From: Octopus sinensis
Lineage: Eukaryota
DNA: 64,000 bases
Assembly: GCF_006345805.1 (NCBI RefSeq)
Contig: NC_043010.1
Coordinates: 60,450,001-60,514,000 of the forward strand
Direction: 5' to 3'
Positions 2,808 through 63,146 of the stretch are shown here, one piece after another (the stretch's first letter is position 1; each line of letters opens with the position of its first letter). A program made the translations under genes and the position numbers. The notes under the pieces were generated by a model. It saw only the letters and a program-made list of their open reading frames with translations. It was not told the origin of the DNA and did not search any database.

Positions 2808-5207
2808 ATGATAAGAAATATTCTTTCACTATATTTGCTAGACATGCTACTGTTCTCTGTTGTGTCTTTAGACATTACCTACCATATCAATGAAGAAAAC
2901 AGCCCTCATGCCTACATAGGAGATATTGCTGCTGATTCTAATATGTCACATTTTTTTAAACATCAACAACACAATCTTGTTACGTTTACACAATTACAAA
3001 GGAAGGTGTCAAGTGGCTCTCATCTATTTAATGTCACCAACTTAGGGAAACTTTACACAACTCAGACACTGGATGCTGAATCTTTGTGTACAATCAACAA
3101 AGAATGTTTCAAAATTGTTAGGATAGCAGTTCGGAAAAGAAAAACCTATGTAAAGATTTTAAAAGTCAAAGTAATCATAAAAGACATCAATGATCATGGA
3201 CCTGAGTTTCCAGAAAGTGAAATAAATTTGCAATTTGATGAAAATGATCGGGAAGGAACTAAAAAGCCAATTCCAAATGCTATTGATAGAGATATTACCA
3301 TTCAGAATTCTAGGATAACTTATGAACTGAAGGAAAATATAGATGACCCATTTTCATTGTCTCTTTCAAAAGACTATGATGGGACTTTCATACCTGAGAT
3401 AGTTCTACAAGGTAAGCTGGATAGAGAAAGAAAGAAACATTATATGTTAAAGCTGATTGCTAAAGATAATGGTATACCACCAAATGAAAATATTTTACAT
3501 TTTCAGATATCTGTAACTGACTCTAATGATAATAAACCATTATTTTCTCAAAAAGTATATAACATTTCAATAAAGAATAAACACCCCAAATCAAAACCAA
3601 TTTTAGTTTTAGAAGCCACAGATTTAGATTCAGGGACAAATGGAAAGATTGCCTTTAATTATAGTCCCAAAACACCAATTGAAATAAGAAAATATTTTGA
3701 TTTGAAAAAGGCATCTGGAGAATTGTTTGTAAATGAGTACTTTAAAATAGATACCAAAAACTCTTACAAGCTGTTTGTTGAGGCTAAAGATGGAGGGAAA
3801 CCTCCCTTAAGTTCAACAACAGTGATTTTGATTTCTAAAGAAAGCAATCATAATATTGCTCCAAAAATTGATATAGACTTTGTGTTTCCTTTGTCAGAAA
3901 GTTCGACTGCTCTTTTAGAAGACATTAAAGTTAGTAGTTTTATAGCTTATGTCATAATTACTGACAATGATATTGAAGAAAATGGACAGATTGATTGTAA
4001 TTTGGAACATGAAACCTTTGGAATAGTTGAAATGGGTTCACATGAATATAAAATGACCACAAAATGTCCTCTTGACAGAGAAACAAAAGATCGCTATGAT
4101 ATTGTACTTGTTTGCCAGGATATGGGATTTCCACCACTCAAATCAGAAAAACAATTTTCTATTGAAGTACTTGATGTCAATGATGTAGAGCCACATTTTA
4201 CCAAAGAGACATTCCAATTCCTCACCTATGAAAACCAGAAAGTTGACTTCCCTATTGGCTTCATCAATGCTACAGACCCTGATCTTGGAGATGGAGGCCA
4301 ACTTACATATTCTATCATCAATGATAACAACAATGATAACATTCCTTTCCAACTGACAAAATATGGATTTTTTTCTACATCACAATCAATAGATCGAGAA
4401 ATGAAAGACATCTATAAGTTCAAGGTTTTAGTGAAAGATAAGGGAACACCTTCACTCAATGACACTGCCAATATTGTTATCGAGATTCTAGATAAAAATG
4501 ATAATGCTCCATATTTTACGTTTCCTAATAATGACCCTTACAATCTAGATGTCCACTACCATCCAAACAGTAAAAAGGACATCACAATTCTGAAAGCATC
4601 TGACAAAGACACTGGAAACAATGCTTTCCTCACATATGGAATATTAAAATCTAATGATAAAAACATGCTAACGGTAAATTCTTACACTGGGGTATTATCA
4701 TTCTCTCGTATAATTAATATAAATGATGCTGGAACGTATGAGCTACAGTTCATGGTGAAAGACAGTGGTACTCCAGTTCAATCAGCAACAACTGTTATCA
4801 TGCTAACACTGCATGTTAGTAATGATACACTTCCAATGCAAGCTGCAACCCATCTCTTATCTGGCACTGACTTAAACATAATTTGGGTAATAATCATTGT
4901 GGCAGCAGGAGTAATACTATCTGTGGGTATTGTAGTTTGCTTAACAATGTGTGTTTTCAGATGTATTAATCACATTAAAAGTTCACCTTCAACTTCAGAT
5001 AATCATAAAATCCTGACAGGCTCTAAGATGAGGCCAATGCCATATGAAACTAACAACCCTATTGCATTTACAAGAAATACAGAAGACACATATAACAGAA
5101 ATTGTCAGACAATGAGCTCAAAAAGTCATTATTACCCTGAGATGGAAAAGACTATCAATGAAGGCAAATTTTCAGCAACAGCTAGAAAACTTCCACCAAT
5201 TCCACAG
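2808..5207 (+). CDS. Protocadherin A, large coding exon (signal peptide, EC1-EC6, TM, proximal tail)
   Basis: 811-aa ORF with hydrophobic leader, cadherin motifs (DINDHGPEF, LDRE, DSNDNKP, DVNDVEP, DKNDNAP), EC1 C-x5-C (CTINKEC) typical of protocadherins, and TM IIWVIIIVAAGVILSVGIVVCL. Phase-0 donor CAG|GTTGGT at 5207/5208, homologous to the donors in genes C and D. Confidence 0.95.
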
Positions 5208-5448
5208 GTTGGTAAAATTTATAACATTCCTTTTATAGCTTAAATTCCCAGACGTTTTAACCTCATTCTGTATTTTTTAAGATTTACATTATATTTTAAT
5301 TAATTTAATCCCTGATCATCTCATGTACTACATTCCAAATATAAATGCATTTTTAAGGCTTAATCAGAGTGTTTATTTCTAATACTGAGTTTCAAACTTT
5401 AAACAACTGTGCCTCTACCCCAACTTTTGAAATATGATACCACTTTTT

Positions 5449-35639: not shown

Positions 35640-36630
35640 TTAATATTTTGAAAACGATGTGGAATTTTAAGAACTCAAGAGTCATCTCCCTTGCAACATT
35701 TGTCGTCTGCGTTCCGTCAGCAGACGCTCTTCGCCGTCGATGAAAGATCGTAAAATTCGTCTCCTTTGATTTCTAATTTTATATTGTTGCAAAATTAATT
35801 TAGGAAAATGTTTTCAATATGGATATTTACATGTAAAGGCAAAGAGTGAGTAATGATATTAATTTCTGATATATCTTACGAGTTTTGACTGATATTTTGT
35901 GAATTTCTAACAATGCTTGATAATCCTTTTTTATAAAAAAAAAAAAAGGGAGGATTCTTTATTAATTGCTAAAAAGAAAACTTGTTAATATTTCATAGTT
36001 TGATAATCAAAAAAAGTTTTATTCATAAATCGAAAAAAAAAAAAGTCTTTATAAAGTGCTAAAAAGAAATTCAGAGAAGCTCCATAAGTTCTTTGTTTCC
36101 TTTCTTCTTTTTTTACTAACATTTCATTAACGGTGTTTAAATAATGTTGCTTAAAAAATTCGAAGTACTTCCATTGCCAACTTTGGAGCAGTTTTATTGT
36201 CGTCTGCTCTAATGGAAATATTAAATTTTTATATTGTTTTGGTATCGTTTCCTTTAATGGAAATATCAAATTGCTACATTGTTTTATTGTTGTCTGTTTT
36301 AATGGAAATATTAAATGGCCATTTTGTTTTAGTATCGTCTGCTTTAATGGAAATATCGAATTGTTTTAATACCATTTCCTTTAATGGAAATATTAAATTT
36401 TTATATTGTTTTAATATCGTTTCCTTTAATGGAAATATTAAATTGTTTTAATATCGTCTGCTTTCATGGAAATTTTAAATTGCAACATTGTTTTAGTATC
36501 GTCTGCTTTCATGGAAATATTAAATTGCCGTATGATTTAGTATCGTCTGCTTTAATGAAAATAATAAATTGCTACATTGTTTTAGTATCGTCTACATTAA
36601 TGGAAATATTAAATTGTTTTAATATCGTCT
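35637..36630 (-). repeat. Inverted duplicate of ~32344-33334
   Basis: Mirror ORFs in the track are nearly identical (32705+ vs 35985-, 32523- vs 36197+, 32315- vs 36384+); only a few substitutions and poly-A/T length differences by eye. Confidence 0.95.
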
Positions 36631-38196
36631 GCTTTCATGGAAATATTAAATTGCTACATTGTTTTAGTATCGTCTGCTTTAATGGAAATATTAAATTTCC
36701 ATATTGTTTTAGTATCGTTTGCTTTAATGAAAATATTATATTGCTACATTGTTTTAGTATCGTCTGCTTTAATGGAAATATTAAATTTCCATATTCTGTT
36801 ACTATCGTCTGCTTTAATGAAAATATTAAATTTCCATATTGTTTTAGTATCGTTTGCTTTAATGAAAATATTATATTGCTACATTGTTTTAGTATCGTCT
36901 GCTTTAATGGAAATATTAAATTTCCATATTGTTTTAGTATCGTCTGCTTTAATGAAAATATTAAATTGCAACATTGTTTTAATATCGTCTGCTTTAATGG
37001 AAATATTACATTTTTATATTGTTTCCATATTGTGTTACTATCGTCTGCTTTAATGAAAATAATAAATTTCCATATTGTTTTAATATCGTCTGCTTTAATG
37101 AAAATATTATATTGCTACATTGTTTTAGTATCGTCTGCTTTAATGGAAATATTAAATTTCCATATTGTTTTACTATCGTCTGCTTTAATGGAAATATTAA
37201 ATTGCCATATTGTTTTAGTATCGTTTGCTTTAATGAAAATATTATATTGCTACATTGTTTTAGTATCGTCTGCTTTAATGGAAATATTAAATTTCCATAT
37301 TGTTTTACTATCGTCTGCTTTAATGGAAATATTAAATTGCCATATTGTTTTAGTATCGTTTGCTTTAATAAAAATATTATATTGCTACATTGTTTTAGTA
37401 TCGTCTGCTTTAATGGAAATATTAAATTTCCATATTGTTTTACTATCGTCTGCTTTAATGAAAATATTAAATTTCCATATTGTTTTAGTATCGTTTGCTT
37501 TAATGAAAATATTATATTGCTACATTGTTTTAGTATCGTCTGCTTTAATGGAAATATTAAATTTCCATATTGTTTTACTATCGTCTGCTTTAATGGAAAT
37601 ATTAAATTGCCATATTGTTTTAATATCATCTGCTTTAATGAAAATATTATATTGCTACATTGTTTTAGTATCGTTTGCTTTAATGGAAATATTAAATTTC
37701 CATATTGTTTTACTATCGTCTGCTTTAATGTAAATATTAAATTGCCATATTGTTTTAATATCATCTGCTTTAATGAAAATATTATATTGCTACATTGTTT
37801 TAGTATCGTCTGCTTTAATAAAAATATTAAATTGCTACATTAGTTCACTATCGTCTGCTTTAATGAAAATATTAAATTGCCATATTGTTTTAATATCATC
37901 TGCTTTAATGGAAATATTAAATCGCTACATTGTTTTAGTATCATCTGCTTTAATGAAAATATTATATTGCTATATTGTTTTACTATCGTCTGCTTTAATG
38001 AAAATATTAAATTGCCATATTGTTTTAATATCATCTGCTTTAATGAAAATATTAAATTTCCATATCGTTTTAATATCGTCTGCTTTCATGGAAATATTAA
38101 ATTGCTACATTGTTTTAGTATCGTCTGCTTTAATGAAAATATTAAATTGCCATATCGTTTTAATATTGTCTGCTTTAATAGAAATATTAAATTTTC
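36191..38196 (+). repeat. 45-bp minisatellite, long array with 135-bp higher-order repeat
   Basis: About 2 kb of 45-bp units; translation shows 15-aa periodicity cycling through three variants. Confidence 0.95.
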
Positions 38197-38622
38197 ACAG
38201 CCTTTGACCATTCTTCCATATTAAATACACTTTGTTATTGCTATAAATATTCTTTTCATCCTCTCGTTTGTGATAAAAGTTTCTGTAACTCCAAAAGCAC
38301 TGCTCCTAGAATTCAATGTATGTGTGAGGATGTAGACATTTCTGGTTTGGTCCCCACATGCACATTTAGCTTACCAGGATTGGTCAGACTAATTCTCTGA
38401 TAGAAAAGCTTGAGGTATTTTGTTAATTGACTTTGTGGCAAGCATTTACTCAAACTTTCTACAATCAGCATTTCCAAAAAGTGTGCTCATCTTAAACAAG
38501 CTTTCATTACTGTAAAAAAATCATCTCTGGGTAGTCTAATGGCTATAATATTAACCATTAGACTGAGGAATCCACTAAAATATATGTGCGTGGGTGTGTA
38601 TGAGTATTATGTGTATGTTTAT

Positions 38623-39011
38623 GGTGCAGGCATAGCTGTGTGGTTGGAAGTTTACTTCCCCAACCTTTACATGTGGTTCCAGGTTCACTCCCGATATGTG
38701 GCACCTTGGGTAAGTGTCTTCTGCTATAGCCTTGGGCTGACCAAAGCCTTGTTAGTGGATTAGGTAGCTGGAAACTGAAAGAAGCCAGCCGTGTGTTTGT
38801 ATCTATGTTTGTTTCCCACCACCTCTTGACAACTGGTGTTGGTGTATTTACATTTCTCTATCATAGCAGTTCAGCAAAAGAGACTAATAGATTAAGTACT
38901 AGGCTTAAAAAAGAAGACAATAAGTACTGGGGTTAGTTAGTTCAATTAAAATTCCACAAGGTGGTACCCCAGCATGGCCACAATCTAATGACTGAAACAA
39001 GTAAAAGAAAA
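38623..39011 (+). mobile_element. SINE family A, diverged copy
   Basis: GGTGCAGGCATAGCTGTGTGG head through ATGACTGAAACAAGTAAAAG tail. Confidence 0.75.
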
Positions 39012-39949
39012 AAATGTGTGTATATTATATATGACATGATTTAAAATTAAATGTTTAAATTTTCACTTTTATTGAATTAATCATTCCTAATGGTACTTTA
39101 ATATCCCTCTGAACAACTTGCATGTCTATCCTTTCATATTAAACTCACTTTCACATTACTATTAATGAATATTTACCTAATCTGTAGATAAATACTTTTA
39201 AAAAATCACTCCCAGAACTCATTGCTCTGTATTAATAGAACGTATAACTCTCAATTAAATAATTCTCTTCATAAACGATGTCTGTGTTAGGATGATAGTT
39301 TATCATGTGAGTTACATTATATTCATCGTCTTCAGCATCATAATATAATATCCACTTCCCTATGCTTGTTGTGGCAAGTTATCTAAAGGCAGATGCCCTT
39401 CCTGTTTGCAACCTTTACCTATTTCCAAGCAAAGTAATATTTTCCTATAGCTAGATATTTTTTGTGAAAGACTGGAAATGAACATTTTATTTACAACCAT
39501 CAGGTGGTGTCTAGACAAGGGTACTCACACATGCATACACTCACACACACACACACGCATATATGTGATATATATATATATATGGGCTTCTTTCAGTTTC
39601 CATCTACTAAATCCATTCACTAGGCTTTAGGTGTCCTGGGGCTATAGTACAAGAGTTAAAGACTCTTGCCTTGGGTTTCATTCAAAACCTAAGAATGAAA
39701 CCCAAGGCAAGAGTCTTTAACTCTTGGGTTTCATTCTTAGGTTTTGAATGAAACCCAATACCACTATAGTCGGATAGTAAGTTTCTTAACCACTTAGCCA
39801 TGTCTCTACCTCTTAATTATTATGCTTCTGAGATGTTTCAATCTTTAGTAAGGAATGCTAAATATTTCTAATTCACAAAATTTGATGTAGAAATTCATGC
39901 ATTCTTCTGAGCTTTGTTTTCTTTCTTCAGAAACTCTACACCAAAAACA

Positions 39950-42440
39950 GACTGTACTGCACTGGCAATTACATTGGAACTTTATGCAGAAAATTTTAAG
40001 CAAAAGATAATAAAAGATTCTGTTCCAAAGAAGGGTATTTTAAATATTAATGTGTACATGTGTCAAATGTTAATAAAAATCAACTATAGTTTTCTAAACT
40101 ATTAACATCTCGTAATAAAAAATATACAGGGTTTAGATATAACAAAATGGACAAAGAGTTCATATTTTAACTATAATTTATCCTTCAGTTTATTTCTAGC
40201 TTGTAGATAGAAATTTTAAAATAAATCATTTAGATTTGCTAGAGAATTTTTTGTACCTTCTTTATTAATGTTACAGTTCTTCAGATTATAGTGTCTGTCA
40301 CAATTCACTGATCATTATTCTGTTTACTTTTTTAGCTTGTGGTGCAATAATTAATAATGATGTTGGACATAATGGGGATGTTACATTCTATTATTAGAAG
40401 ACACTTTGACAAAGAAACATCTGTTGTATATCATGACCTGGAATCATCTCTGTTAAAGACTAAGAAACAGTTCTCTGTCAAAGTAACTGATGTCAATGAT
40501 GTAGAACCACATTTTACCAAAGAGACATTCCAATTCCTCACCTATGAAAACCAGAAAGTTGATTTCCCTATTGGCTTCATCAATGCTACAGACCCTGATC
40601 TTGGAGATGGAGGCCAACTTACATATTCTATCATCAAGGAAAATAATAATGATAACATTCCTTTCCAACTGACAAAATATGGATTCATTTCTACATCACA
40701 ATCAATAGATCGAGAAATGAAAGACATCTATAAGTTCAAGGTTTTAGTGAAAGATAATGGAACACCTTCTCTCAATGACACTGCCAATATTGTTATTGAG
40801 ATTCTAGATAAAAATGATAATGCTCCGTATTTTACGTTTCCTAATAATGACCCTTACAATCTAGATGTCCACTACCATCCACACAGTAAGAAGGACATCA
40901 CAATTCTGAAAGCATCTGACAAAGACACTGGAAACAATGCTTTCCTCACATATGGAATACTGAGATCCATCATCATCATCATTTCATGTCGGTTTTCCAT
41001 GCTGGCATGGGTTGCACAGTTTGACAGGAGCTATCTGTTTTGGCTGGATTTCTACAGCTGGATGTCCTACTTAGTACCAACCACTTTACAGAGTGTGCTG
41101 GGTGCTGAACTTACACGCTGATGTGTTATATTTCTCAGACAATTTACCAAAATGTTTCAGAAACATATGAGCTGACCTTAGCAAGTGATGTAATAGCACT
41201 GCTAACACAATAGAACATGGTATTGACTTAAAAAAACATTTACTCTACTTTGTAATATATTGTGGTTGCATAACAAAATACCATGTTCTTAAAGTCTTTA
41301 ATATTAGCTGGAGTTTATAGTGGTACTCCAGTTCAATCAGCAACAACTGCTATCATACTAACACTGTTTGTTAGTAATGTTACATCTTCAATGTTGACTG
41401 CTGTGCCATTCCAGTCTGGTCACGACCTGAATATGACTTGGATAATTATCATTGTAGCAGCAGCTGTAATAGTATCTGTGGCTATTGTAGTGTCCATAAC
41501 ACTGTGTGTTTTCAGATGTATTAATCACACAAATAACGCACCTACAACAGCAGAGAATCCCAACTTTCTCTCTCAGACTGAGATGAGACAATTGCAAGAA
41601 ATGCAGAAGAGATATTTAACTGAAATCTTCAGACAATAGAGTTTAAAAGTCAGTTTTTTCTGGAGATGGAACAGACACCAGATGAGAGGAAATTCTGAAC
41701 AACACAGAGGAGACTTCTCACCTGTTCCTCAGGTAAATATCATTTTATGTCTCTGATATCCTTTTGATTTTAAATGCAAAAGTATTTTAGTGATTATTCA
41801 CACATGTTCAAATATTTATATAAATTATCAATTTTAGAAACTCATGTGTATGAGCAGTTTTATTCCTTTGCTTAAAATTTATTGTTTATCTGTGACTTTC
41901 TGAATTAATTATTCATTTTTGTTTAGTGATACTTAAACAGTTTCAATGCCTATTATAGAAATACAACACTTTTTATATAATGACTGTTTTATTAGGTAAG
42001 ATCTAGATTTGTATCAATATAATTTTTTATCTTTTCTATAATCAACTGAGATATGTTTCTATCCATAGTCGAGAAGGTCACATCAGTTCCAACCTGTCTA
42101 ACTACAACAGTGACACCTTAACATCCCAAAAGGACAGAGAAGCTAGCAAGAGTAATGGCAAGACTAAACCATATGATGAGATACCTGCAGAACCAGGTAA
42201 CTTTTATCGAAACATAACATATAAATGTAATTGCCTTTATTACTGTAGGACAATATATAATGTTATGCTTAGTGTAATATAAGATCAATGTTTCTATCTT
42301 TATATATTGGAGTTGTTATATTGAAATGTAATTTGTGTTTGTATATTTGATATTTTGCAGAATATACCAATGACAATCCAGTGGCAGCCACAATACTAAA
42401 GGGACAGCAAATACAAGATACCTTTCTACAGCCAACATAG
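39950..42440 (+). pseudogene. Protocadherin pseudogene (psi-Pcdh-B)
   Basis: Decayed EC2-EC4 traces (IKDSVPKKGILNINV, NVNKNQL*FSK, NNDVGHNGDV then a frameshift to HFDKE). Intact EC5 block 40471-40968, RTE-tail insertion at 40969, 131-bp insertion at 41175, 10-nt deletion near 41320, deletion near 41595, exon-2 acceptor AG changed to TG near 42047. Terminal exon 42361-42440 intact apart from Y to F. Confidence 0.88.
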
Positions 42441-43289
42441 TAGATGTTCCATGACTATTGTTAAATGATTCTCTCACATACCAAATTTTATACAATACTT
42501 TATATTCATATAAAAATATCAACTTTATTTTTCTTTCACACATCACACAAAACATGCCTTTAATGTGATTTACATCTCTGATACATGAAATACTACAAAT
42601 ACCCTTCTGTATATTATCATTGATGACAGTATATTGGGCTCATTGTATGTTATATTTAAATTGCTAAGCTCCTGTTTTAGTGTAATTCTAATTTCTATAT
42701 TTACTTCATCCATTTGTAGCATAAAACAACATAAAAGTTTTGCTATTATATCATTTAACTAATGATCTTAATCTCAAATGTTGTAATCTGGTAGAATGAA
42801 TCACACACATGCATGCACACAGTTCACAGATTCAGATTCAAGTTATTATTTCTTTATTCTAGAATTAGAACGTGTAAATACAATATATTATAATAATGAT
42901 ACACAAAATTTAATGAATGAATTTTTAAAACTGTTTGTTTATGCAATTAAAACGTTTAATAAACATTGATTTGAATTTATTTTATTAGTTTTGTTATATC
43001 AGGAAATGATTAGAGTGTTGGATTTACTTTTGTTGCCCATTTTGTTCACATTATTATACAGTATTTCCTCTTCTTACCCTAAGTCTTAACAGTTCATGAT
43101 GTTATAATAGTCTCAACCAAATACAGAATATTTTTCAGTATTTAAACTCTCATACAATCAGAATTATACTCTTAACACTAAATATCAGATTTGTTTTTTA
43201 GTAAGCCCTAAATACGTAATATGATAATGTGATCTTATGAAAATCATGAATCTACTTCAGTGTAAAGTGAGTTCTCTTGTTCGATGTGT

Positions 43290-43686
43290 TTGTGTGACAC
43301 AGACACCATTGCAGTAATTTCCTATTGGATGAGAGAGATTTGCTATATTTCCTTCAATATTGAAAGTGAGGCTGATAGCTTTTTTCTTTGTTCATCATAC
43401 ACACAATTGTGTGTTGTGTGTGTGGAGGACATAGAGTTGTAACTAGCACACACCAGCATCTGGCTAACATCTCATACAAGCCCTGTCACACTATTATATC
43501 AGCAGTTACACAGGAACACCACCACTACAACAGCAGCAGCAGCTGCAGTAACACAGGAACACTACTACAACAGCAGCAGTACCACTATAATACCACTACA
43601 GCAGCAGCAGCAGTTAGAGTGGAACACTACAGCAGGATACACATCATCCATCACACACAACTACAGTGAAGGATTAAACAATGCAG
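43290..43686 (+). promoter_or_regulatory. Candidate promoter and non-coding first exon of Pcdh-C
   Basis: Block duplicated at 51230-51621. Reverse CCAAT (ATTGG) near 43325, AGCAGTTACACAGGAACA at 43501, CAG/CAC/CTA triplet-rich tract, donor ATGCAG|GTAAGT at 43686/43687. Confidence 0.6.
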
Positions 43687-45649
43687 GTAAGTCTCTCTCT
43701 CTCTCTCTCTCTCTTTCTCTTTAATATCTTTTCATATTCATTATAACATTTATATTATTTGTGTTTCTAATGAAAGACAGGGTAAGGCTAATATCTAAAA
43801 TGTCTGCCATGTTATATGTGTATATGTGTATATATATATATAGGGATTGAGAAAGTAGAGGATAGAGACATCTAGCCATCACTTCCACCATTACCAACAG
43901 TAGCAGCAGCTGTTGTAATATCTCTGAAGTAAAGGCACATTTACAGAGCAGTTGTTGCTTGCAGGGCTCGTTTTGGTTGTAATAGTTTTATTTGATTGGT
44001 CATAAAATAATATATATGTAGAATTCTTGTGTAATTTGTTCAATAAATTTTCTGTGGTTCAATAAATATTCATTGATATCCAGTCGTACATAAGCTGTTA
44101 GGATATTTAACAGTGTATTTGCATCTTAGATATAATCTGCATAGATATAGATAGTATTTAGACAGTTTCTATGCAACAGCAATATCACGAAGTATCTTAA
44201 ATCCTATTTCATTAAGAAAGAAACATTGTTAGATAATTTACAATCTAGATGATACAAAGTAACAACTGACACAATATCTGACTTTATTGTTTTAGTCATG
44301 AATACATGTTTAATTCTGTTTCTTTTTTTTTTTTTTTAATATAAGAATCTTATTCTTTCAGCAAATACTTTGTTGTGCATTATTCTAGGAGAACCATTGC
44401 CTTCTGTTTGTTACTAAACATTCAGAACTATTTTTCTTGTTTCCTGTTATTTCTTTGATTGTAATGGTATCCTTAATGTTCAATATTTTCTTTATACATT
44501 TCCTTTCTTTCTATTATGTGTCAGTGTTCTTTTTCACCTTCTTATATTGAAATTTAAAAAATAGTCATAATGTGAATTATATTATTGTATAATTATGGTT
44601 AATTTAATCTGTAAGATGATATCTATATTATTAGTGCTGTTCTGGTATAATCCTTTCTCATTGTACAGAAATTACATATGTTTTATCAATAGACTCACTG
44701 TGAAAATATAATACATGAATAAACCAGCAGTAGAAAGTTAAGAATGCCCAACTACTTTTACTTTTCTTAAAACTCATGAGAAATCACTTGCCATGTCTTT
44801 CACTTGCTATAATTAATGATATATCTTCTTAAAATATCCAAGCAAATTATTACTGGGATAAAGAAACTTACACAATATTACATAATGGTACAAAGTTGAA
44901 GGCCAACATTTAATAGGAAAACTTCAGACACAGCTTTGTTATAATTAAATAGGTATATAGAAATTGTGTATGTTTATGTGTGGGTCATATATATGAATTG
45001 CTTATGAGGGTGCAGATGTGCAATCAGGTGAAAAGTCAGTAATGAATAGAATGAAGAATTTAGTATGAAAGCAGATATCAACCAGGTTTCAGCTCTCTTA
45101 TTTATTGTAATCTTCGAGTATATAACAAGTTTAAGGCCAGCTGTCCATAAGAATTCCTATGTACTGAAGGACTCACTCTTTTAGTTGAATGTGTTGTAGA
45201 ATTTAGAGTGTAAATTCCAGTTGTAGAAGCAAAATCTAGAATCAAGAGGCTTGAAAGTAAACTTCATAGTCACTATAATATTAGTAGGTAGGTTACATTA
45301 TATGGATTTCTTACCTATTCCTTTTCTGGTTATTGAACATTGCTGTTTCCACACCAACAGGAAAACAGCCATGTTCAATTTGCAGAGAAATAGTAGGTAG
45401 GAATTCCATATGATGCACTGAATGTAAATGATAGACACACAAGAAATGTAGTAGTATTACAAGTTGGCTAATGGAAAAAACAAACATTGCAGCAAATGCA
45501 AAGGCACTAAAACTGCACAGGAAGTTGATCCGTTCAAATTTTAGGAAGGATTTCTTGATATTGTTGATAGTTTTTGTTACATCAGGGGCCTAATTATCTA
45601 TGGTGGTGGATCTGTTGAAGGTATAGTCGCCAGAGTAAAAGCTAATTGA

Positions 45650-47156: not shown

Positions 47157-49559
47157 ATGAATGGAAATATCATTTACCTGGTGTGTTTGCTACAATTACG
47201 ACAGTCTCTTGTACTGTCCATAGATATTACATACCATGTCAAGGAAGAAGGCAGTCCTCACACCTATATAGGAGACATTGCTGTTGACTCCAACTTATCA
47301 TACCCTCTCACACATCAACAACACACTCTCATTACATTTACACAACTACAAAGGACAGTTGAAAGTGGTTCTCACTTATTTAATGTCACCAACTCAGGAA
47401 AACTATACACTACTCAAACACTGGATGCTGAGTCTCTGTGTACATACAACAAGGAATGTTCCAGAATTGTTAAAGTAGCAGTAAGGGAAAATAAAAGATT
47501 TCTGAAGATCCTGAAGGTGAAAATAATAATAGAAGACATCAATGATCATTCTCCAGAATTTTCTATTGATAAAATCACTGTTAAATATACTGAAGATAGT
47601 TTTAAAGGAACCAGAAGGATAATTCCATTTGCCATAGATAGGGATATAACCATCTTGAATTCCCAAATTTCATATAAAATAATGGCTAGTCAAAGAGATC
47701 CATTTTCTTTGTACATGAAAAAACAAAATGATGGTGCCTTCATACCTCAACTTATTCTTGAAGAAACATTAGACAGAGAAGTCAAAGACTCATATATGTT
47801 GACCCTGGAAGCTAAAGATGGAGGGAACCCTCCCAAAACAGCTACACTCAAGGTACACATATCTGTGACAGACGTCAATGATAACACACCTGTATTTTCA
47901 CAGAAAGTCTACAATGTCTCTATAAGCAATTCACATCAAAGACATTTACCAATTCTTACTTTAAAAGCAACAGATAGAGATTCTGGACACAATGGAAAGA
48001 TTTCTTACCATTTCAACCATAAAACTCCCATTCTGTTCCAGAAATATTTTTTATTAAAGAGAACTAATGGTGAGATATATTTAAAAGATAATTTTAGTTT
48101 TGGTGGAAAACATACATACAAATTATACATTGAAGCACAAGATGATGGGAGTCCCTCCCTAAGTTCTGTAACAATGGTACAGATTCACGTAATTAGTAAC
48201 CAAAATTCTGCTCCCATGATAAATATAGATTTTGTATCTCCTTTATCAGAGAGTTCCACAGCAGTTTCAGAAGACAGTGAAGTAGATAGTTTTATAGCTT
48301 ATGTTATGGTCACCGACAATGATAGTGGACCTAATGGTGAGGTTAGCTGTGATTTAAAACATGATAAATTTAAACTTGCCAAAATGGATTCTAAAGAATA
48401 TAAAATAATTGTTAAGGGCCACCTTGACAGAGAAATAAGGGACCATTATAAAGTATCTGTTGTGTGTCGTGATATGGGGTCACCTCAACTAGAAAGTAAA
48501 AAATATTTCTCTGTCAAAGTAACTGATGTCAATGATGTAGAACCACATTTTACCAAAGAGACATTCCAATTCCTCACCTATGAAAACCAGAAAGTTGACT
48601 TCCCTATTGGCTTCATCAATGCTACAGACCCTGATCTTGGAGATGGAGGCCAACTTACATATTCTATCATCAGTGATAACAACAATGATAACATTCCTTT
48701 CCAACTGACAAAATATGGATTCATTTCTACATCACATCCAATAGATCGAGAAATGAAAGACATCTATAAGTTCAAGGTTTCAGTGAAAGATAATGGAACA
48801 CCTTCTCTGAATGACACTGCCAATATTGTTATTGAGATTCTAGATAAAAATGATAATGCTCCGTATTTTACGTTTCCTAATAATGACCCTTACAATCTAG
48901 ATGTCCACTACCATCCACACAGTAAGAAGGACATCACAATTCTGAGAGCATCTGACAAAGACACTGGAAACAATGCTTTCCTCACATATGGAATACTGAG
49001 ATCCAATGATAAAAACCTGTTTACAGTGAACTCACACACTGGTGTGTTATCTTTCTCTCGCACAGTTTACCAAAATGATGCAGGAACATATGAGCTGCAG
49101 TTTATAGTGAAAGACGGTGGTACTCCAGTTCAATCAGCAACAACTGCTATCATACTAACACTGTTTGTTAGTAATGATACATCTCCAATGTTGACTGCTG
49201 TGCCATTCCAGTCTGGTCACGACCTGAATATGACTTGGGTAATTATCATTGTAGCAGCAGCTGTAATACTATCTGTGGCTATTGTAGTGTCCATAACACT
49301 GTGTGTTTTCAGATGTATTAATCACACAAATAACTCACCCACAACAGCAGAGAATCCCAACTTTCTCTCTCAGACTGAGATGAGACAATTACTGTATCAG
49401 ACCAACAATCCTGTTGCAATAACGAGAAATGCAGAAGAGATATTTAACCGAAATCTTCAGACAATAAAATCTAAAAGTCAGTTTTTTCTGGAGATGGAAC
49501 AGACACCAGATGAATGGAAATTCTCAACAACACAAAGGAGACTTCCACCTGTGCCTCAG
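47157..49559 (+). CDS. Protocadherin C, large coding exon
   Basis: 813-aa ORF with signal peptide, six EC repeats, C-x5-C in EC1 and TM. Acceptor CTAG|AAATAT at 47120/47121; phase-0 donor CAG|GTAAAT at 49559/49560. Confidence 0.95.
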
Positions 49560-49935
49560 GTAAATATTATTTTAAACAATTCTATGGCATATTTTTGAAA
49601 CATTCATCAAAATATATTTGAAATCTCTTATTTTATATACATGTTATGTTCTTTATGCCTTCTCCATAAAACATAATGGCTCTTTCATATTTTTACAATT
49701 TACAGAATTCATAAATCTAAAATTTCCATATATTTCATTAAACTAGTATCTCTGTTTTGTTTATTGTCTACTCCAAGTTATTTTCATTAACTAAGACTGT
49801 CTTCAATTATACTGTTTCTGCTCATTTTAAAAGCATTCCTCTCTTGTGTCTTACCAGAAACATTCTAGAATACAAATATATATGTTTCTTCTTTTTAACA
49901 TTATGCTTCACTCTGCTTTTTTTTCTAATCACCAG

Positions 49936-50080
49936 AGATGTGATTCAATCCATAGTCAAGGACGTCGTACCAGTTCCATCATGTCTTACAACAGTGACAC
50001 CTTAACATCCCAAAAGGACAGAGAAGCTAGCAAGAGTAATGGCAAGACTAAACCATATGATGAGATACCTGCAGAACCAG
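49936..50080 (+). CDS. Protocadherin C, cytoplasmic exon 2
   Basis: Acceptor TTTTCTAATCACCAG, 145 nt open (RCDSIHSQGRRTSS...KPYDEIPAEP), donor CAG|GTAACT in phase 1. Confidence 0.85.
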
Positions 50081-50244
50081 GTAACTTTTATCAAAACATA
50101 ACATATAAATGTAATTGCCTTTATTACTGTAGGACAATATATAATGTTATGCTTAGTGTAATACAAGATCAATGTTTCTATCTTTATATATTGGAGTTGT
50201 TATATTGAAATGTAATTTGTGTTTGTATATTTGATATTTTGCAG

Positions 50245-50324
50245 AATATACCAATGACAATCCAGTTGCAGCCACAATACTAAAGGGACAACAAATACAA
50301 GATACCTATCTACAGCCAACATAG
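50245..50324 (+). CDS. Protocadherin C, terminal coding exon
   Basis: Acceptor ATATTTTGCAG; (E)YTNDNPVAATILKGQQIQDTYLQPT*. Predicted spliced protein is 875 aa. Confidence 0.85.
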
Positions 50325-51229
50325 TAGATGTTCCATGACTATTGTTAAATGATTCTCTCACACACCAAATCTTATACAATACTTTATATTCATATAAAAA
50401 TATCAACTCTATGTTTCTTTCACACATCACACATAAAGGGCCTTGCAGGGCATCTATTATGACCCTTGATTTACATCTCTGATACATGAAATACTACAAA
50501 TACCCTTCTCTATATTATCATTGATGACAGTATATTGGGCTCATTGTATGTTATATTTAATTTGCTAAGCTCCTGTTTTAGTGTAATTCTAATTTCTATA
50601 TTTACATCATCCATTTGTAGCATAAAACAAAATAAAAGTTTTGCTATTATATCATTTAACTAACGATCTTAATCTGGAGGTTCTGCAGAATGTTGACATA
50701 TCTTGTAGTATCCACACCATCTGAGAGGAGAGTAACAATAAATTTAGCATAATTTGAAGTAAAGTGAAATTTAAATGAAATATTATCAGATCTAGTGTTG
50801 AATTTCGATTTAGTAAATCTTAAGAATACTCCCCAAATTAAATACATTCCTACACTAAACACTTTTAGTTTGTCCATTAAAATGTAGCTATATGAATATT
50901 TCATATAAATAATAAAATACAATTTTTATGCAGCATTTTGCTTAATTTACATTTACTGTTGTCACCTAATAGCTGTTGTTTAGATTTCTTTTTGCCACGT
51001 TTGTAGCAACGATGTCTATTTCTTTAACTAACATTGAATTTTTTGTTGTTACAAGGATCTTTTTATTGCTAGGATATACTATAATCTGTTTAATATTAAA
51101 AAATAAGTAATAACAGAACTAAATAGGATACTCCTCGATTAATCACACTATCTATAAAATATATGAATGATAATTGCACATAATTCATCAAACAGCCTCT
51201 GTTTAACATCAATTCTCTTATTTGATGTG

Positions 51230-51621: not shown

Positions 51622-51748
51622 GTAAGTCTCTCTCTCGCTTTCTCATCTTTTCATATCCTTTATAATTATATTGTATGTGTTTCTAATGTACGACAGGGTA
51701 ATGCTACAATCTAAAATGTCCACCATGTTGTGTGTGTGTGTATATATT

Positions 51749-51780
<32 letters not shown>

Positions 51781-60004: not shown

Positions 60005-60289
60005 TATAAAATTTTTGAAAGAACGCTTCAGATGAGTATTGTTTACAACGTCTAGGGGAGATAACTCTAATGTAAATCCGGACTATTTCTTCACACTAAC
60101 AGGAACACATAAAAACTTACTTTTAATGACTTTCTTTCACAATTTTCAAATATATTTCTATTGTATAGTACTCCAAGGTTTATATTTGATGAACTTTCAT
60201 GTCAAATTTTTTCTTTAAGCTGGTATTAAATAATTTCTATTATATTTGTAGAAATATTCAATAATAATGAAGAATGAAGAGTTGCAATC

Positions 60290-62686
60290 ATGAATGAAAA
60301 CGTTTTTTACTTGGTGTGTTTGCTATATATAAAACAGTCTGTTGTAATGTCTGTAGACATCACCTACCACGTCAAGGAAGAAGACAGACCTCACACCTAT
60401 ATAGGAGACATTGCTGTTGACTCCAACTTATCACACCCTCTCAAACATGAGCAACGCGCTCTCATTACACTTACACAACTACAAAGGACAGTCGAGAGTG
60501 GTTCTCACTTATTTAATGTCACCAACTCAGGAAAACTATACACTACTCAAACACTGGATGCTGAGTCTCTGTGTACATACAACAAGGAATGTTCCAGAAT
60601 AGTTAAAGTAGCAGTGAGGAAAGGAAAAACTTTCATGAAGATTTTGAAGGTGAAAATAATAATAGAAGACATCAATGACTATTCTCCAGAATTTACGGAT
60701 GATGAAATAGGTATCAAGTTTGCAGAAGATAGTCTGAAAGGAAATCAGAAAAAAATTCCATATGCTATAGACAGAGATATTACCATCATGAATTCCCAAA
60801 TTTCATATAACATAAAATATCATAAAAGAGAACCATTTTCTTTGTATATGGCAAAAGATAATGATGGTGTTTTTACACCTGAACTGACTTTAGAAGACAA
60901 ATTAGACAGGGAAGTAAAAGATTTGTATATATTGACCTTAGAGGCTAAAGATGGTGGGAACCCTCCCAGAACAGGTACACTCAAGGTACGCATATCTGTG
61001 ACAGATGTTAATGATAACACACCTGTATTTTCACAGAAACTCTATAATATCTCTATAAATAATTCACATCAAAGACATTTACCAATTCTTACTTTAAAAG
61101 CCACAGATCAAGATTCTGGAGACAATGGAAAGATTTCTTACCATTTCAACCATAAAACATCTCAAAATATCCAGAAATATTTTGTATTGGATAAGAAAAC
61201 TGGAGATTTATTTTTACATGATAATTTTTACTTTAGTAAGATGCAGTCTTTATTTATAGAAGCAAGAGATGGTGGGAATCCACCTCTAACGTCGGTAGCC
61301 AGAATTCACATTTATGTAATTAATAACCAAAACAATGTTCCGTTGATAAATATAGATTTTGTGTCTCCTTTAACAGAGAGTTCCACTGCAGTTTCAGAAG
61401 ACAGTGAAGTAGATAGTTTTATAGCTTATGTTATGGTCACTGACAATGATAGTGGACCTAATGGTGAGGTTATCTGTGATTTAAAACATGATAAATTTAA
61501 ACTTGCCAAAATAGATTCTAAAGAATATAAGATAATTATTAAGGGCCATCTTGACAGAGAAATAAGGGACCACTATAAAGTATCTATTGTGTGTCATGAC
61601 ATGGGGTCACCTCAACTAGAAAGTAAAAAATATTTCTCTGTCAAAGTAACTGATGTCAATGATGTAGAACCACATTTTACCAAAGAGACATTCCAATTCC
61701 TCACCTATGAAAACCAGAAAGTTGACTTCCCTATTGGCTTCATCAATGCTACAGACCCTGATCTTGGAGATGGAGGCCAACTTACATATTCTATCATCAA
61801 TGATAACAACAATGATAACATTCCTTTCCAACTGACAAAATATGGATTTATTTCTACATCACAACCAATAGATCGAGAAATGAAAGACATCTATAAGTTC
61901 AAGGTTTTAGTGAAAGATAATGGAACACCTTCTCTCAATGACACTGCCAATATTGTTATTGAGATTCTAGATAAAAATGATAATGCTCCGTATTTTACGT
62001 TTCCTAATAATGACCCATACAATCTCGATGTCCACTACCATCCACACAGTAAGAAGGACATCACAATTCTGAGAGCATCTGACAAAGACACTGGAAACAA
62101 TGCTTTCCTCACATATGGAATACTGAGATCCAATGATAAAAACCTGTTTACAGTGAACTCACACACTGGTGTGTTATCTTTCTCTCGCACAGTTTACCAA
62201 AATGATGCAGGAACATATGAGCTGCAGTTTATAGTGAAAGACGGTGGTACTCCAGTTCAATCAGCAACAACTGCTATAATACTAACACTGTTTGTTAGTA
62301 ATGATACATCTCCAATGTTGACTGCTGTGCCATTCCAGTCTGGTCACGACCTGAATATGACTTGGGTAATTATCATTGTAGCAGCAGCTGTAATACTATC
62401 TGTGGCTATTGTAGTGTCCATAACACTGTGTGTTTTCAGATGTATTAATCACACAAATAACTCACCCACAACAGCAGAGAATCCCAACTTTCTCTCTCAG
62501 ACTGAGATGAGACAATTACTGTATCAGACCAACAATCCTGTTGCAATAACGAGAAATGCAGAAGAGATATTTAACCGAAATCTTCAGACAATAAAATCTA
62601 AAAGTCAGTTTTTTCTGGAGATGGAACAGACACCAGATGAATGGAAATTCTCAACAACACAAAGGAGACTTCCACCTGTGCCTCAG
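60290..62686 (+). CDS. Protocadherin D, large coding exon
   Basis: 809-aa ORF with the same architecture as C. Acceptor TTTGTAG|AAATAT at 60251/60252; phase-0 donor at 62686/62687. Confidence 0.95.
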
Positions 62687-63146
62687 GTAAATATTATTTT
62701 AAACAATTCTATTGTTTGATAGCATTTTTGTATAACATTCATGAAGACATATTTTAAATATCTAGTTTTATTTACATGTTATGTTCTTTATATTTTCTCA
62801 GTGCCCTTTTTGATAGTTTTACATTTTGCAGATGTCTTAAATTTAAAATTTCCAAATATTTTATTAAAGTAGTATCTTTGTTTTGTTTACTCCAAAATAT
62901 TTTAATTTGCTTAGTATGTAAATATAATAGATCTAAAATTTTCACATACTTCATTAAATGAGTTTTCCGTTTTGTTTATCACTTCTCCAAGTTCTTTCTA
63001 TTAACTTAGTAGATCTTTAAAATTACATTATTTCTGCACATTTTAACAGCATTCCTTCCTCGAGTCTTACTGGAAACATTCTAGAATATAAATGCGAATG
63101 TTTCTTTGATTTAACATTATGTTTCACTCTGTTTTCTAATCACCAG

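What the first reader, a model, noticed from the sequence alone, without database searches (positions are those of the whole stretch)
39950..40968. Pseudogene with a freshly converted EC5 inside heavily decayed flanks
Seen: EC2-EC4 remnants upstream of 40471 are barely recognisable (stops, frameshifts, deletions), and 41106-41732 has many indels. In contrast 40471-40968 is open and nearly identical to C and D. Inference: the same EC5 tract was overwritten after the gene died, where protein selection cannot act. This points to a mechanistic conversion hotspot, and the pseudogene may also act as a donor.
Basis: partly seen in the sequence, partly recalled or inferred. Interest (0 to 1): 0.7.

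Follow-up and report, generated by a model that had tools for sequence, protein, structure and literature searches.

The report
Octopus protocadherin relic patched by conversion
A long-dead, truncated protocadherin gene in the Octopus sinensis protocadherin array keeps several stretches (including its EC5 domain) indistinguishable from its living neighbours, most likely because they are repeatedly overwritten by gene conversion while the stretches trapped between insertions and deletions decay; this is a clean but unsurprising example of concerted evolution.

Summary
The window is Octopus sinensis CM016872.1:60,450,001-60,514,000, part of a tandem protocadherin (PCDH) array. Genes A, C and D are intact; 40326-43900 is a 5'-truncated relic (psi).

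The core observation holds. In 40471-40968 psi is open and 97.8-98.0% identical to C and D. Two details do not hold:
- No PCDH homology exists upstream of ~40326, so there are no EC2/EC3 remnants.
- The 3' flank contains a second clean block (41317-41593), 97% identical to C and D.

Psi's EC4 deletions and repeat insertion are shared with O. vulgaris (DNA) and O. bimaculoides (protein XP_052828893.1). The gene therefore died before these species split.

I counted substitutions private to psi, shared by both species' copies and absent from 10 paralogs. There are 0/499 in the EC5 tract and 0/274 in the EC6-end/TM block. The stretches between lesions carry 22/279 (p=1e-13).

Five of the 10 O. sinensis/O. 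vulgaris psi differences in EC5 swap variants found in paralogs (p~2e-5). Synonymous divergence in the tract is low within species (A-C 0.12) but normal between Octopus and Argonauta (0.25-0.28).

Post-mortem gene conversion is supported. A dedicated EC5 hotspot and a donor role for psi are not. This is a known kind of process in a new setting.

The parts
40326..40470 (+). Remnant of the C-terminal part of EC4. It is the 5' end of the relic; EC1-EC3 and the start of EC4 are absent. It carries 56-nt and 18-nt deletions and many private substitutions. At paralog-variable sites it resembles the 'KTKKQFSV' (L001-type) subfamily.
   Evidence: tblastn hit of C aa 378-397 to 40326-40385 and nothing above the shuffle level upstream; alignments; 7/71 psi-private substitutions in 40400-40470; indel list.
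40357..41121 (+). Open reading frame of 254 aa: the EC4 tail, a complete EC5 cadherin domain, half of EC6, then read-through into the repeat insertion. It has no signal peptide, no TM segment, and none of EC1-EC3 (nor the N-terminal part of EC4). The same ORF exists in O. vulgaris (254 aa) and O. bimaculoides (259 aa, XP_052828893.1).
   Evidence: Pfam PF00028 at residues 61-150, E=3.9e-16; three-species alignment; accession.
40471..40969 (+). Homogenised tract 1 (C residues 451-616: EC4 last strand, EC5, first half of EC6). 0/499 psi-private substitutions and no indels. 97.8-98.4% identical to C, D and E, and 95.2% to A. Its 3' end abuts the repeat insertion. Its 5' end coincides with the family-wide boundary where the subfamilies converge.
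40638..40647 (+). Cluster of four substitutions private to the O. sinensis psi, all at consecutive third codon positions (AAGGAAAATAAT versus consensus AATGATAACAAC). No donor was found in about 185 kb of paralogous sequence.
40970..41105 (+). Insertion of a dispersed repeat (136 nt, replacing about 21 nt of EC6). It is present at the same site in O. vulgaris, and it is translated in the O. bimaculoides ortholog.
   Evidence: At least 10 related copies in the window and loci.
41106..41174 (+). Decayed mid-EC6 island trapped between two insertions. It has 8/69 psi-private substitutions (9 of about 10 changes at codon positions 1-2) and a 2-nt deletion. At least two of the changes, including the stop at 41119-41121, are shared with O. 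bimaculoides.
41175..41316 (+). Unique insertion of about 130 nt with about 10 nt of EC6 deleted. It is shared with O. vulgaris and has no other copy in the sequences held.
41317..41593 (+). Homogenised tract 2 (end of EC6, transmembrane helix, juxtamembrane). 0/274 psi-private substitutions and no indels. It differs from C/D-type genes at 6-9/277 positions, from L001-type at 21-29, and from A at 67-69. It lies outside the ORF and is bounded on both sides by psi's own indels.
41594..41747 (+). Cytoplasmic tail of exon 1, following a 31-nt deletion. It has 7/139 psi-private substitutions, a 1-nt insertion at 41718 and in-frame stops. The splice-donor-like CAG|GTAAAT is retained at about 41730-41738.
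42040..42750 (+). Relic's own exon 2 (to 42196), intron 2, exon 3 (42361-42440) and 3' region. The 5' part of exon 2 is decayed. 42150-42749 has 0 psi-private substitutions (homogenised block 3).
   Evidence: blastn 93% identity to C 49919-50675; windowed counts; exon peptides read against P0007.
43350..43800 (+). Downstream non-coding block shared with C/D-type units; 0-4 psi-private substitutions per 150 nt (homogenised block 4).
   Evidence: blastn.
47157..49598 (+). Intact paralog C (exon-1 ORF), a likely donor type. Its O. vulgaris ortholog is CAI9733457/8.
60290..62719 (+). Intact paralog D (exon 1 of O. sinensis protein P0007), a likely donor type.
2808..5243 (+). Intact, divergent paralog A (exon 1 of O. 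sinensis P0041). It shares only the EC5 tract with C, D and psi. The high-identity run corresponds to psi 40488-40959.

Best explanation
40326-43900 is an old, non-processed, 5'-truncated relic of a tandem protocadherin gene in the Octopus sinensis PCDH array. It is still a recipient of non-allelic (interlocus) gene conversion from neighbouring intact paralogs.

Each stretch of psi that keeps uninterrupted homology to intact genes is repeatedly overwritten and stays at the family consensus, synonymous sites included. These stretches are 40471-40969 (EC5 plus half of EC6), 41317-41593 (EC6 end plus TM), 42150-42750 and 43350-43800.

Stretches that are short, or are isolated by psi's own insertions and deletions, or have no close donor, are no longer converted. 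They accumulate private substitutions. These are the EC4 tail, the 69-nt mid-EC6 island and the cytoplasmic tail.

Shown: the mosaic itself, its age relative to three species, exchange of paralog variants, and low within-species but normal between-species synonymous divergence in the tract.

Inferred: the molecular mechanism (heteroduplex or synthesis-dependent strand annealing (SDSA) repair limited by heterology), the direction of transfer (gene to psi), and the absence of function of psi.
For: (1) Identity of the locus. The window equals O. sinensis CM016872.1 (100% over 13.7 kb with L003). A, C and D are intact 809-813-aa exon-1 ORFs with 5-6 cadherin repeats.

(2) Psi is truncated and broken. 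The structure is the same in the O. vulgaris assembly: L004, 97.8% over 22.7 kb, 1.4% mismatches. It is also the same in O. bimaculoides XP_052828893.1, which shares the EC4 deletions, the junction into the repeat insert and the stop codon.

(3) Psi-private substitutions shared by both species' copies and absent from 10 paralogs: tracts 0/773, islands 22/279, Fisher p=1.1e-13. At the island rate about 61 would be expected in the tracts.

(4) Of 10 O. sinensis/O. vulgaris psi differences in the tract, 5 have both alleles present among paralogs. Examples: O. vulgaris psi carries the A-type G at 40506 and T at 40687. The chance per substitution is 0.039, giving binomial p=2e-5. In the decayed islands all such differences are private.

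(5) O. bimaculoides versus O. sinensis psi ORF, amino-acid differences: 4/166 in the tract against 14/88 in the flanks (p=1.4e-4).

(6) Family level. A-C dS is 0.124 in the tract, against 0.9-1.5 in EC1-EC4 and 0.6-0.8 in the 3' part. Octopus-Argonauta dS in the tract is 0.25-0.28, the same as in EC4, EC6-rest and the cytoplasmic part (0.27-0.29). A versus Argonauta is 0.32. Paralogs are thus closer within a species than across species only in the tract, which indicates concerted evolution and not nucleotide-level constraint.

(7) A second relic (L001 ~9923-11200, O. vulgaris) shows the same clean/decayed mosaic around its own 34-nt deletion.
Against: - No O. bimaculoides DNA could be retrieved, so the deeper comparison rests on protein only.
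- Donor and direction are not identified for any single event.
- The window copy is not 'fresh': it has 5 private changes in the tract, including an unexplained 4-change cluster.
- The island counts come from short segments (69-139 nt). Part of the EC4-tail divergence may be pre-death paralog divergence and not decay.
- Individual variant-swapping sites could in principle be short-read polishing errors in paralogous sequence.
- The ORF is intact in three species and is called as a gene in two annotations, so some function cannot be excluded.
Confidence: 0.85

Rival explanations
1. The EC5 tract is a dedicated, mechanistic conversion hotspot. A sequence or chromatin feature initiates exchange specifically there, with fixed tract ends in all cluster members.
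For: The tract is the only part shared at about 95-98% by three otherwise divergent subfamilies: A, L001-type and C/D-type. The high-identity run of A (psi coordinates 40488-40959) ends within 17 and 10 nt of psi's tract ends. GC3 is slightly higher in the tract (0.34 versus 0.22-0.28 in EC2-EC4).
Against: Between C and D the 3' region is more homogenised than EC5 (dS 0-0.011 versus 0.039). Psi has at least three further clean blocks outside EC5. Psi's block ends sit on its own indels. The second relic has clean blocks with different ends (C coordinates 48324-48698 and 48849-49223). EC1 has a similar GC3 (0.33). Selection for a constant EC5/EC6 module in the intact genes, combined with homology-dependent conversion, explains the same data.
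Confidence: 0.2
2. The ORF 40357-41121 is translated into a single-EC5 mini-protein, and purifying selection on that domain, not conversion, keeps it conserved.
For: The ORF is intact in three species, including an in-frame 15-nt indel. It is annotated as a protein in O. bimaculoides (XP_052828893.1), and a 226-aa gene is called over it in O. vulgaris (L004 3262-5267). Amino-acid conservation is confined to the cadherin domain.
Against: There are zero psi-private changes at synonymous sites too; at least 9 would be expected at island rates on about 115 synonymous sites. Tract 2 and blocks 3-4 lie outside the ORF and are equally clean. In tract 2 most psi differences from C/D (five of the six I read in the alignment) change the amino acid. 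Differences between orthologous psi copies swap paralog variants. There is no signal peptide or TM, and the ORF runs into a repeat insertion. Survival of the flanking ORF is not unlikely by chance: my rough estimate is about 0.1-0.4.
Confidence: 0.07
3. Psi is a young duplicate of a C/D-type unit. The 'decayed' patches are recent local rearrangements or hypermutation around insertions, so no post-mortem conversion is needed.
For: Most alignable psi sequence is 95-98% like C/D, including non-coding downstream DNA. The divergent patches adjoin insertions and deletions.
Against: The EC4 deletions, the repeat insertion and at least two island substitutions (including the stop codon) are already present in O. 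bimaculoides. The psi flanks of that species differ by 16% at the amino-acid level. The clean blocks therefore should carry roughly 3% lineage-specific changes but carry none that are shared by the two close species. The EC4 tail has L001-type variants while the 3' part is C/D-type.
Confidence: 0.05
4. The EC5-coding DNA is conserved because it is itself a cis-regulatory element under nucleotide-level selection, retained even in the relic.
For: Very low dS in the tract among paralogs. By analogy, from my own knowledge and not tested here, vertebrate Pcdh variable exons contain exonic CTCF sites.
Against: Between Octopus and Argonauta the tract's dS (0.25-0.28) equals that of neighbouring domains, so synonymous sites are not constrained across species.
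Confidence: 0.03
5. Assembly or polishing artefact: a paralogous EC5 segment was misjoined or copied into the relic.
For: Highly similar paralogs are prone to collapse and to short-read polishing errors. Some single variant-swapping sites could arise that way.
Against: The same structure, junctions and clean/decayed mosaic occur in two independent assemblies (O. sinensis GCA_006345805.1 and O. vulgaris GCA_951406725.2) and in the O. bimaculoides protein model.
Confidence: 0.02

Closest known systems
Domain-restricted gene conversion in vertebrate clustered protocadherins (Noonan et al. 2004, Genome Res 14:354, as summarised in PMC4978886)
   Same: The family is a tandem PCDH array. Synonymous divergence is lowest in the membrane-proximal ectodomains (EC5/EC6) and the 3' part, and highest in EC2/EC3. 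Here C-D dS is 0.5-0.6 in EC2/EC3, 0.04 in the tract and 0-0.01 further 3'. PMC4978886 reports the lowest dS in EC5 or EC6 and the highest in EC2 or EC3.
   Different: Octopod PCDHs are whole-gene duplicates, each with its own exons 2-3; there are no variable exons spliced to shared constant exons (PMC9068888; seen here for psi, C and D). The expansions are independent. Here the evidence comes from a dead copy, which removes selection on the recipient as an explanation.
Proposed homogenisation of cephalopod PCDH clusters (Albertin et al. 2015 as cited in PMC6339937; Albertin et al. 2022, PMC9068888)
   Same: Same gene family and clade. Those papers suggest recent duplication and/or gene conversion to explain very similar clustered PCDHs, and they note fragmentary PCDH reading frames that may be pseudogenes.
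   Different: In the texts I could search, conversion is offered as a possibility from tree shape. No tract-level mapping, domain-wise dS or pseudogene analysis was found.
Gene/pseudogene pairs evolving in concert by non-allelic conversion, e.g. CYP21A2/CYP21A1P in the RCCX module (PMC3843699)
   Same: A duplicated, non-processed pseudogene stays highly similar to its functional paralog through ongoing interlocus conversion.
   Different: In CYP21 the medically relevant flow is pseudogene to gene. Here no psi-private variant is seen in any of 10 paralogs, so only gene-to-relic flow is evidenced. The relic is also far more damaged, and conversion is broken into blocks by its lesions.

Membership tests
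Octopod tandem protocadherin gene (relic/pseudogene of) | Cadherin EC repeats, a TM segment and a cytoplasmic tail homologous to neighbouring PCDH genes, followed by the gene's own exons 2-3 | tested here: met
   Pfam PF00028 at E=3.9e-16. blastn and tblastn hits to A, C and D from EC4 to the tail and to C/D downstream exons.
Octopod tandem protocadherin gene (functional member) | Uninterrupted exon-1 ORF from the signal peptide through EC1-EC6, TM and tail | tested here: not met
   No homology upstream of 40326. Two deletions in EC4, two insertions, a 31-nt deletion, frameshifts and stops.
Non-processed (duplicated) pseudogene | Retains the intron/exon layout and flanking unit DNA of the parent, and has no poly(A) or retroposition marks | tested here: met
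   Its own exon 2 (to 42196), intron 2 and exon 3 (42361-42440) plus downstream unit DNA align to the C and D units.
Interlocus gene conversion / concerted evolution | Sharp mosaic: near-identical segments flanked by much more divergent segments in the same pair of paralogs | tested here: met
   Psi versus C p-distances along the gene are 0.34, 0.022, 0.15-0.26, 0.029 and 0.079. Private substitutions are 0/773 in tracts versus 22/279 in islands, p=1e-13.
Interlocus gene conversion / concerted evolution | Low synonymous divergence in the tract relative to the rest of the gene | tested here: met
   A-C dS is 0.124 in the tract versus 0.6-1.5 elsewhere. C-D is 0.039 versus 0.15-0.6 in EC1-EC4.
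Interlocus gene conversion / concerted evolution | Paralogs within a species are closer than between species in the tract, although the paralog split is older | tested here: met
   Tract dS: A-C 0.124 versus A-Argonauta 0.32 and C-Argonauta 0.25-0.28. Outside the tract A-C is 0.6-1.5.
Interlocus gene conversion / concerted evolution | Orthologous copies differ by alleles that exist in paralogs (transfer of paralogous sequence variants) | tested here: met
   5 of 10 O. sinensis/O. vulgaris psi differences in the tract, binomial p=2e-5. In the decayed islands the count is 0 of 4.
Interlocus gene conversion / concerted evolution | Direct observation of a conversion event (pedigree, gamete or population haplotypes) | not testable with these tools
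   No read-level or population data are available.
Sequence-specified recombination/conversion hotspot | The same tract ends in independent recipients | tested here: not met
   Psi's blocks are at C coordinates 48507-49005 and 49120-49390. Relic L1a's blocks are at 48324-48698 and 48849-49223. In each relic the ends sit at its own lesions. Paralog A's run does end within 10-17 nt of psi's.
Sequence-specified recombination/conversion hotspot | GC-biased signature or DSB enrichment | tested here: inconclusive
   GC3 is 0.34 in the tract, 0.22-0.28 in EC2-EC4 and 0.33 in EC1. No DSB data are available.
Vertebrate-type clustered Pcdh locus | Variable first exons spliced to shared constant exons | tested here: not met
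   Psi, C and D are each followed by their own copy of exons 2-3. PMC9068888 states the same for coleoids.

The most novel reading that the evidence does not exclude
The EC4-end/EC5/half-EC6 module is held constant across otherwise deeply diverged octopod PCDH subfamilies by conversion that has run since before the Octopus-Argonauta split. Each species carries its own version of the module in all subfamilies. This arose convergently with the EC5/EC6 homogenisation of vertebrate clustered Pcdhs. Relics such as this one may be nearly as old as that split, judging by 10-12% private change in the islands against a per-lineage dS of about 0.14. They would persist as neutral recorders of where conversion can and cannot reach, and so could be used to map the conversion landscape of the whole 40-Mb array free of selection.
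Probability: 0.3. Interest if true: 0.6.

Novelty: new member of a known kind. Interest (0 to 1): 0.42.

Why it matters
Cephalopod and vertebrate protocadherin arrays expanded independently. Whether they evolve by the same rules (variable recognition domains, homogenised membrane-proximal domains) has been suggested mostly from tree shapes.

A dead copy whose lesions predate three species, yet whose intact-homology blocks stay at the family consensus at synonymous sites, gives selection-free evidence. It indicates that interlocus gene conversion is active in the octopus array and that it is limited by local heterology.

It also has a practical consequence. Automated annotation calls this relic a protein-coding 'protocadherin beta-2-like' gene because conversion keeps one cadherin domain and an ORF looking healthy. 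PCDH gene counts and phylogenies in cephalopods can therefore be distorted by converted relics.

Tried and rejected
- EC2-EC3 remnants at 39950-40325. I tested sensitive tblastn (word size 2, E up to 50) against shuffles and blastn with word size 7. Nothing rose above noise, so this is rejected.
- O. bimaculoides DNA for the ortholog. XP_052828893.1 is not on record in the contig look-up. The window's own C ORF, the psi ORF and P0021 were not on record either. The O. vulgaris locus was reached only through the longer isoform P0127.
- The first protein search, using the EC5 peptide, returned only 6 hits because few candidates shared words. It missed A, C and D but did find the O. bimaculoides ortholog.
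- A donor for the 40638-40647 cluster. No match within 3 mismatches in about 185 kb of window plus loci, apart from the consensus form in Argonauta, and no 'KENN' variant among 127 proteins.
- Nucleotide-level constraint on EC5 DNA. Rejected, because the Octopus-Argonauta dS in the tract is not reduced.
- GC-biased conversion signature. GC3 is only weakly elevated and is matched by EC1, so it is not informative.
- Noonan et al. 2004 (PMC353213) is not held in the library. Its findings are cited through PMC4978886.
- ORFs at 33845-35184 have no Pfam match and were left unexplained.
- The third homolog search and the representative-library search were not spent. Dating psi in further species would strengthen the conclusion but would not change it.
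Full report
**What the window is.** The 64-kb window is AT-rich (about 33% GC). It holds three long single-exon ORFs of 809-813 aa with 5-6 cadherin repeats: A 2808-5243, C 47157-49598 and D 60290-62719. L003, fetched through the O. sinensis protein P0007, is 100% identical to window 50290-64000. The window is therefore Octopus sinensis GCA_006345805.1, CM016872.1:60,450,001-60,514,000. D is exon 1 of P0007 and A is exon 1 of P0041. This is part of the octopod tandem protocadherin array described in PMC9068888 and PMC6339937.

**Anatomy of the relic (psi).**
- Protein-level homology to A, C and D starts only at ~40326-40390, in mid-EC4.
- Upstream, in 38000-40330, the best tblastn score (18.9 bits) is below the mean of shuffled controls (20.4; maximum 23.5).
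- The layout against C, runs as follows:
  - An EC4 remnant with 56-nt and 18-nt deletions (40326-40470).
  - A gap-free match at 40471-40969.
  - A 136-nt insertion at 40970-41105. It belongs to a dispersed repeat family with at least 10 copies in the sequences held.
  - A 69-nt mid-EC6 island (41106-41174) with a 2-nt deletion.
  - A unique ~130-nt insertion with a ~10-nt deletion (41175-41316).
  - A gap-free match at 41317-41593 (end of EC6 plus TM).
  - A 31-nt deletion.
  - The cytoplasmic tail (41594-41747), with a 1-nt insertion.
  - An unalignable intron 1.
  - Psi's own exon 2, intron 2 and exon 3 (about 42040-42750), and further unit DNA to about 43900.
- Psi is thus a non-processed, 5'-truncated duplicate.
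- The 'EC5' tract corresponds to C residues 451-616: the last strand of EC4, EC5 and roughly half of EC6.
- ORF 40357-41121 (254 aa) contains one complete cadherin domain and reads through into the repeat insertion.

**Check of the observation.**
- In 40471-40968 psi matches C at 487/498 positions, D at 488/498, E at 490/498 and A at 474/498, with no indels.
- The adjacent EC4 tail is about 33% different from C/D, and the mid-EC6 island is 15-26% different.
- However, 41317-41593 differs from C at only 8/277 positions, and the tail at 11/139.
- The picture is therefore not one fresh domain in uniformly rotten flanks. It is a mosaic of clean and decayed blocks.

**Age of the relic.**
- The O. 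vulgaris ortholog locus (L004; OX597827.1:79,377,850-79,401,017) aligns to window 37302-59944 at 97.84%, with 321 mismatches (1.4%). It has the same lesions.
- O. bimaculoides XP_052828893.1 (P0001, 259 aa) is the ortholog of the psi ORF. It has the same shortened EC4 tail, the same junction into the repeat insertion and the same stop.
- That stop, and the preceding Arg codon, are among the island's psi-private changes. The island was therefore already decayed in the common ancestor.
- The gene was dead before O. bimaculoides split from the O. sinensis/O. vulgaris lineage.

**The key test.**
- I aligned 12 copies: psi from both species, C from both species, D, E, three C/D-type and two L001-type O. 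vulgaris copies, and A.
- I counted substitutions present in both psi copies and in no other copy.
- Conservative counts:

| Segment | Psi-private substitutions |
|---|---|
| EC4 tail, 40400-40470 | 7/71 |
| Tract 1, 40471-40969 | 0/499 |
| Mid-EC6 island, 41106-41174 | 8/69 |
| Tract 2, 41320-41593 | 0/274 |
| Cytoplasmic tail | 7/139 |

- Pooled, the islands give 22/279 and the tracts 0/773 (Fisher p=1.1e-13).
- At the island rate about 61 private changes would be expected in the tracts.
- Downstream, 42150-42749 and about 43350-43800 also carry essentially none.
- The island changes fall almost entirely on codon positions 1-2, as read from the alignment. That fits decay and not functional divergence.

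**Conversion or selection on a translated EC5?**
- The absence of private changes includes synonymous sites. At least 9 would be expected on about 115 synonymous sites.
- Tract 2 and the downstream blocks lie outside the ORF.
- Psi's few differences in tract 2 are mostly amino-acid-changing.
- The 10 differences between the two species' psi copies in tract 1 split into two groups. Five are O. sinensis-private: 40563 plus a cluster at 40638/41/44/47. Five have both alleles present among paralogs: 40506, 40542, 40686, 40687 and 40863.
- A random substitution would reproduce a paralog variant with probability 0.039, giving binomial p=2e-5.
- The O. vulgaris psi carries the A-type alleles at 40506 and 40687. 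This is compatible with a transfer of 180-270 nt from an A-like gene.
- At the protein level, O. bimaculoides and O. sinensis psi differ at 4/166 residues in the tract and at 14/88 in the ORF's flanks (p=1.4e-4). Excluding the O. sinensis-private cluster, the tract differences are paralog variants (YFIFP, GILKS).
- Purifying selection on a mini-protein cannot produce these patterns. Conversion does.

**Conversion or nucleotide-level constraint?**
- Domain-wise Nei-Gojobori estimates give A-C dS of 0.9-1.5 in EC1-EC4, 0.124 in the tract and 0.6-0.8 further 3'.
- C-D dS is 0.15-0.6 in EC1-EC4, 0.039 in the tract and 0-0.011 further 3'.
- Against three Argonauta hians genes (L005), the tract's dS is 0.25-0.28. 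That equals EC4, EC6-rest and the cytoplasmic part (0.27-0.29). A versus Argonauta is 0.32 in the tract.
- Synonymous sites in the tract therefore diverge normally between species but are homogenised within a species. This is concerted evolution and not constraint.

**Hotspot or homology-limited conversion?**
- Tract 1 ends exactly at the repeat insertion. Tract 2 is bounded by the second insertion and by the 31-nt deletion.
- The 5' end of tract 1 (40471) is where psi's L001-like EC4 tail stops resembling C/D-type donors.
- A second relic (L001 ~9923-11200, part of the P0002 gene model) shows the same mosaic, but with clean blocks at C coordinates 48324-48698 and 48849-49223. These flank a decayed patch around its own 34-nt deletion.
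- C and D are more homogenised 3' of the tract than within it.
- These facts favour ordinary homology-dependent conversion, interrupted by heterology, over an EC5-specific initiation site.
- What is special about the tract is that it is shared by subfamilies that are otherwise saturated at synonymous sites. A's high-identity run (psi coordinates 40488-40959) nearly coincides with psi's tract. I therefore leave a 0.2 probability for a real hotspot component.

**Donor role.** No psi-private island variant occurs in any of the 10 paralogs. The only hint is the C at 40686, which is shared by psi (O. sinensis) and gene C of both species. The direction of that transfer is unknown.

**How fresh?**
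- After the O. sinensis/O. vulgaris split, the window copy accumulated 8 private changes in 773 nt of tracts, against about 5.5 expected.
- The O. vulgaris copy accumulated only 1, which suggests it was reset more recently. A caveat applies: the paralog panel holds more O. vulgaris copies.

**Comparison with the known.**
- Conversion restricted to membrane-proximal ectodomains, with EC2/EC3 spared, is established for vertebrate clustered Pcdhs (PMC4978886 summarising Noonan et al. 2004).
- Conversion has been proposed, without tract-level analysis in the texts I could search, for cephalopod PCDHs.
- Pseudogenes evolving in concert with functional paralogs are well known, for example CYP21 (PMC3843699).
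- The finding is therefore a new, clean instance of a known process and not a new mechanism.

**Verdict.** The extent of the remnants, the uniqueness of EC5, the hotspot and the donor role are not.

Noticed in passing
window 36191-38193: Minisatellite with a 45-nt unit, 44.8 copies and 84% matches. It produces spurious ORFs of up to 449 aa on both strands (36384-37733, 37006-37764, 37019-37843).
   Followed up: partly
window 39530-39800: Dispersed element with an internal inverted repeat (about 39650-39760 pairs with itself). Related copies lie at 7092-7203, 29573-29686, 38717-38786 and 53095-53206 and in the O. vulgaris loci, so it looks MITE-like. Together with the repeat at 38620-39014 (copies at 7001-7401 and 52904-53294), it occupies the place where psi's 5' half should be.
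   Followed up: partly
window 40638-40647: Four substitutions private to the O. sinensis psi, at four consecutive third codon positions (N>K, D>E and two silent). The 3-nt periodicity suggests a micro-conversion from an unsampled coding paralog, but no donor was found.
   Followed up: yes
L001 ~9923-11200 (O. vulgaris OX597827.1, ~79.6 Mb): A second 5'-truncated PCDH relic, which begins in EC4 and has a 34-nt deletion in EC5. It shows the same clean/decayed mosaic and is merged into a 207-aa gene model (P0002) spanning 10 kb.
   Followed up: yes
L002 9995-11271 (O. vulgaris): A C/D-type copy with a 1-nt indel inside the EC5 tract. The annotation splits it into a 123-aa model (P0006, ending in out-of-frame residues) and a 326-aa model. 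It is either a very young pseudogene or an assembly error.
   Followed up: no
window 48673, 48737, 48781 (gene C; psi-equivalent 40637, 40701, 40745): Gene C carries three EC5 variants (N>S, Q>H, L>S) that are private to it and shared by the O. sinensis and O. vulgaris orthologs. This one intact gene therefore resists homogenisation at these sites. C and D differ more inside the tract (7/499) than in the 555 nt 3' of it (1).
   Followed up: partly
window 47106 / 60237 and 58001-60000: Homology between the C and D units starts only 51 nt upstream of the ATG, so no promoter-region similarity is seen at blastn level. The 2 kb upstream of D is unusually GC-rich for this window (0.45 versus about 0.33).
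   Followed up: no
window 33845-35184: Two adjacent ORFs (167 and 213 aa) with no Pfam match. They may be transposon-derived.
   Followed up: partly
L004 3262-5267; P0001; P0045: Annotation pipelines call the relic a protein-coding gene: a 226-aa model in O. vulgaris, starting at an ATG created by the C>A change at window-equivalent 40438, and XP_052828893.1 in O. bimaculoides. They also produce chimeric models such as P0045, which fuses exons 2-3 of one PCDH to the next gene. Cephalopod PCDH counts may therefore include converted relics.
   Followed up: partly
L005 (Argonauta hians BAAFZT010000037.1:10,712,705-10,736,803): Three tandem PCDH genes whose EC5/EC6 carry Argonauta-specific residues (FELSKDGF, FPMNDPY, ILKGSDKD, GIRRSN). 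The same residues are present in a divergent Argonauta subfamily member (P0030). This is concerted evolution of the same module in another octopod.
   Followed up: partly
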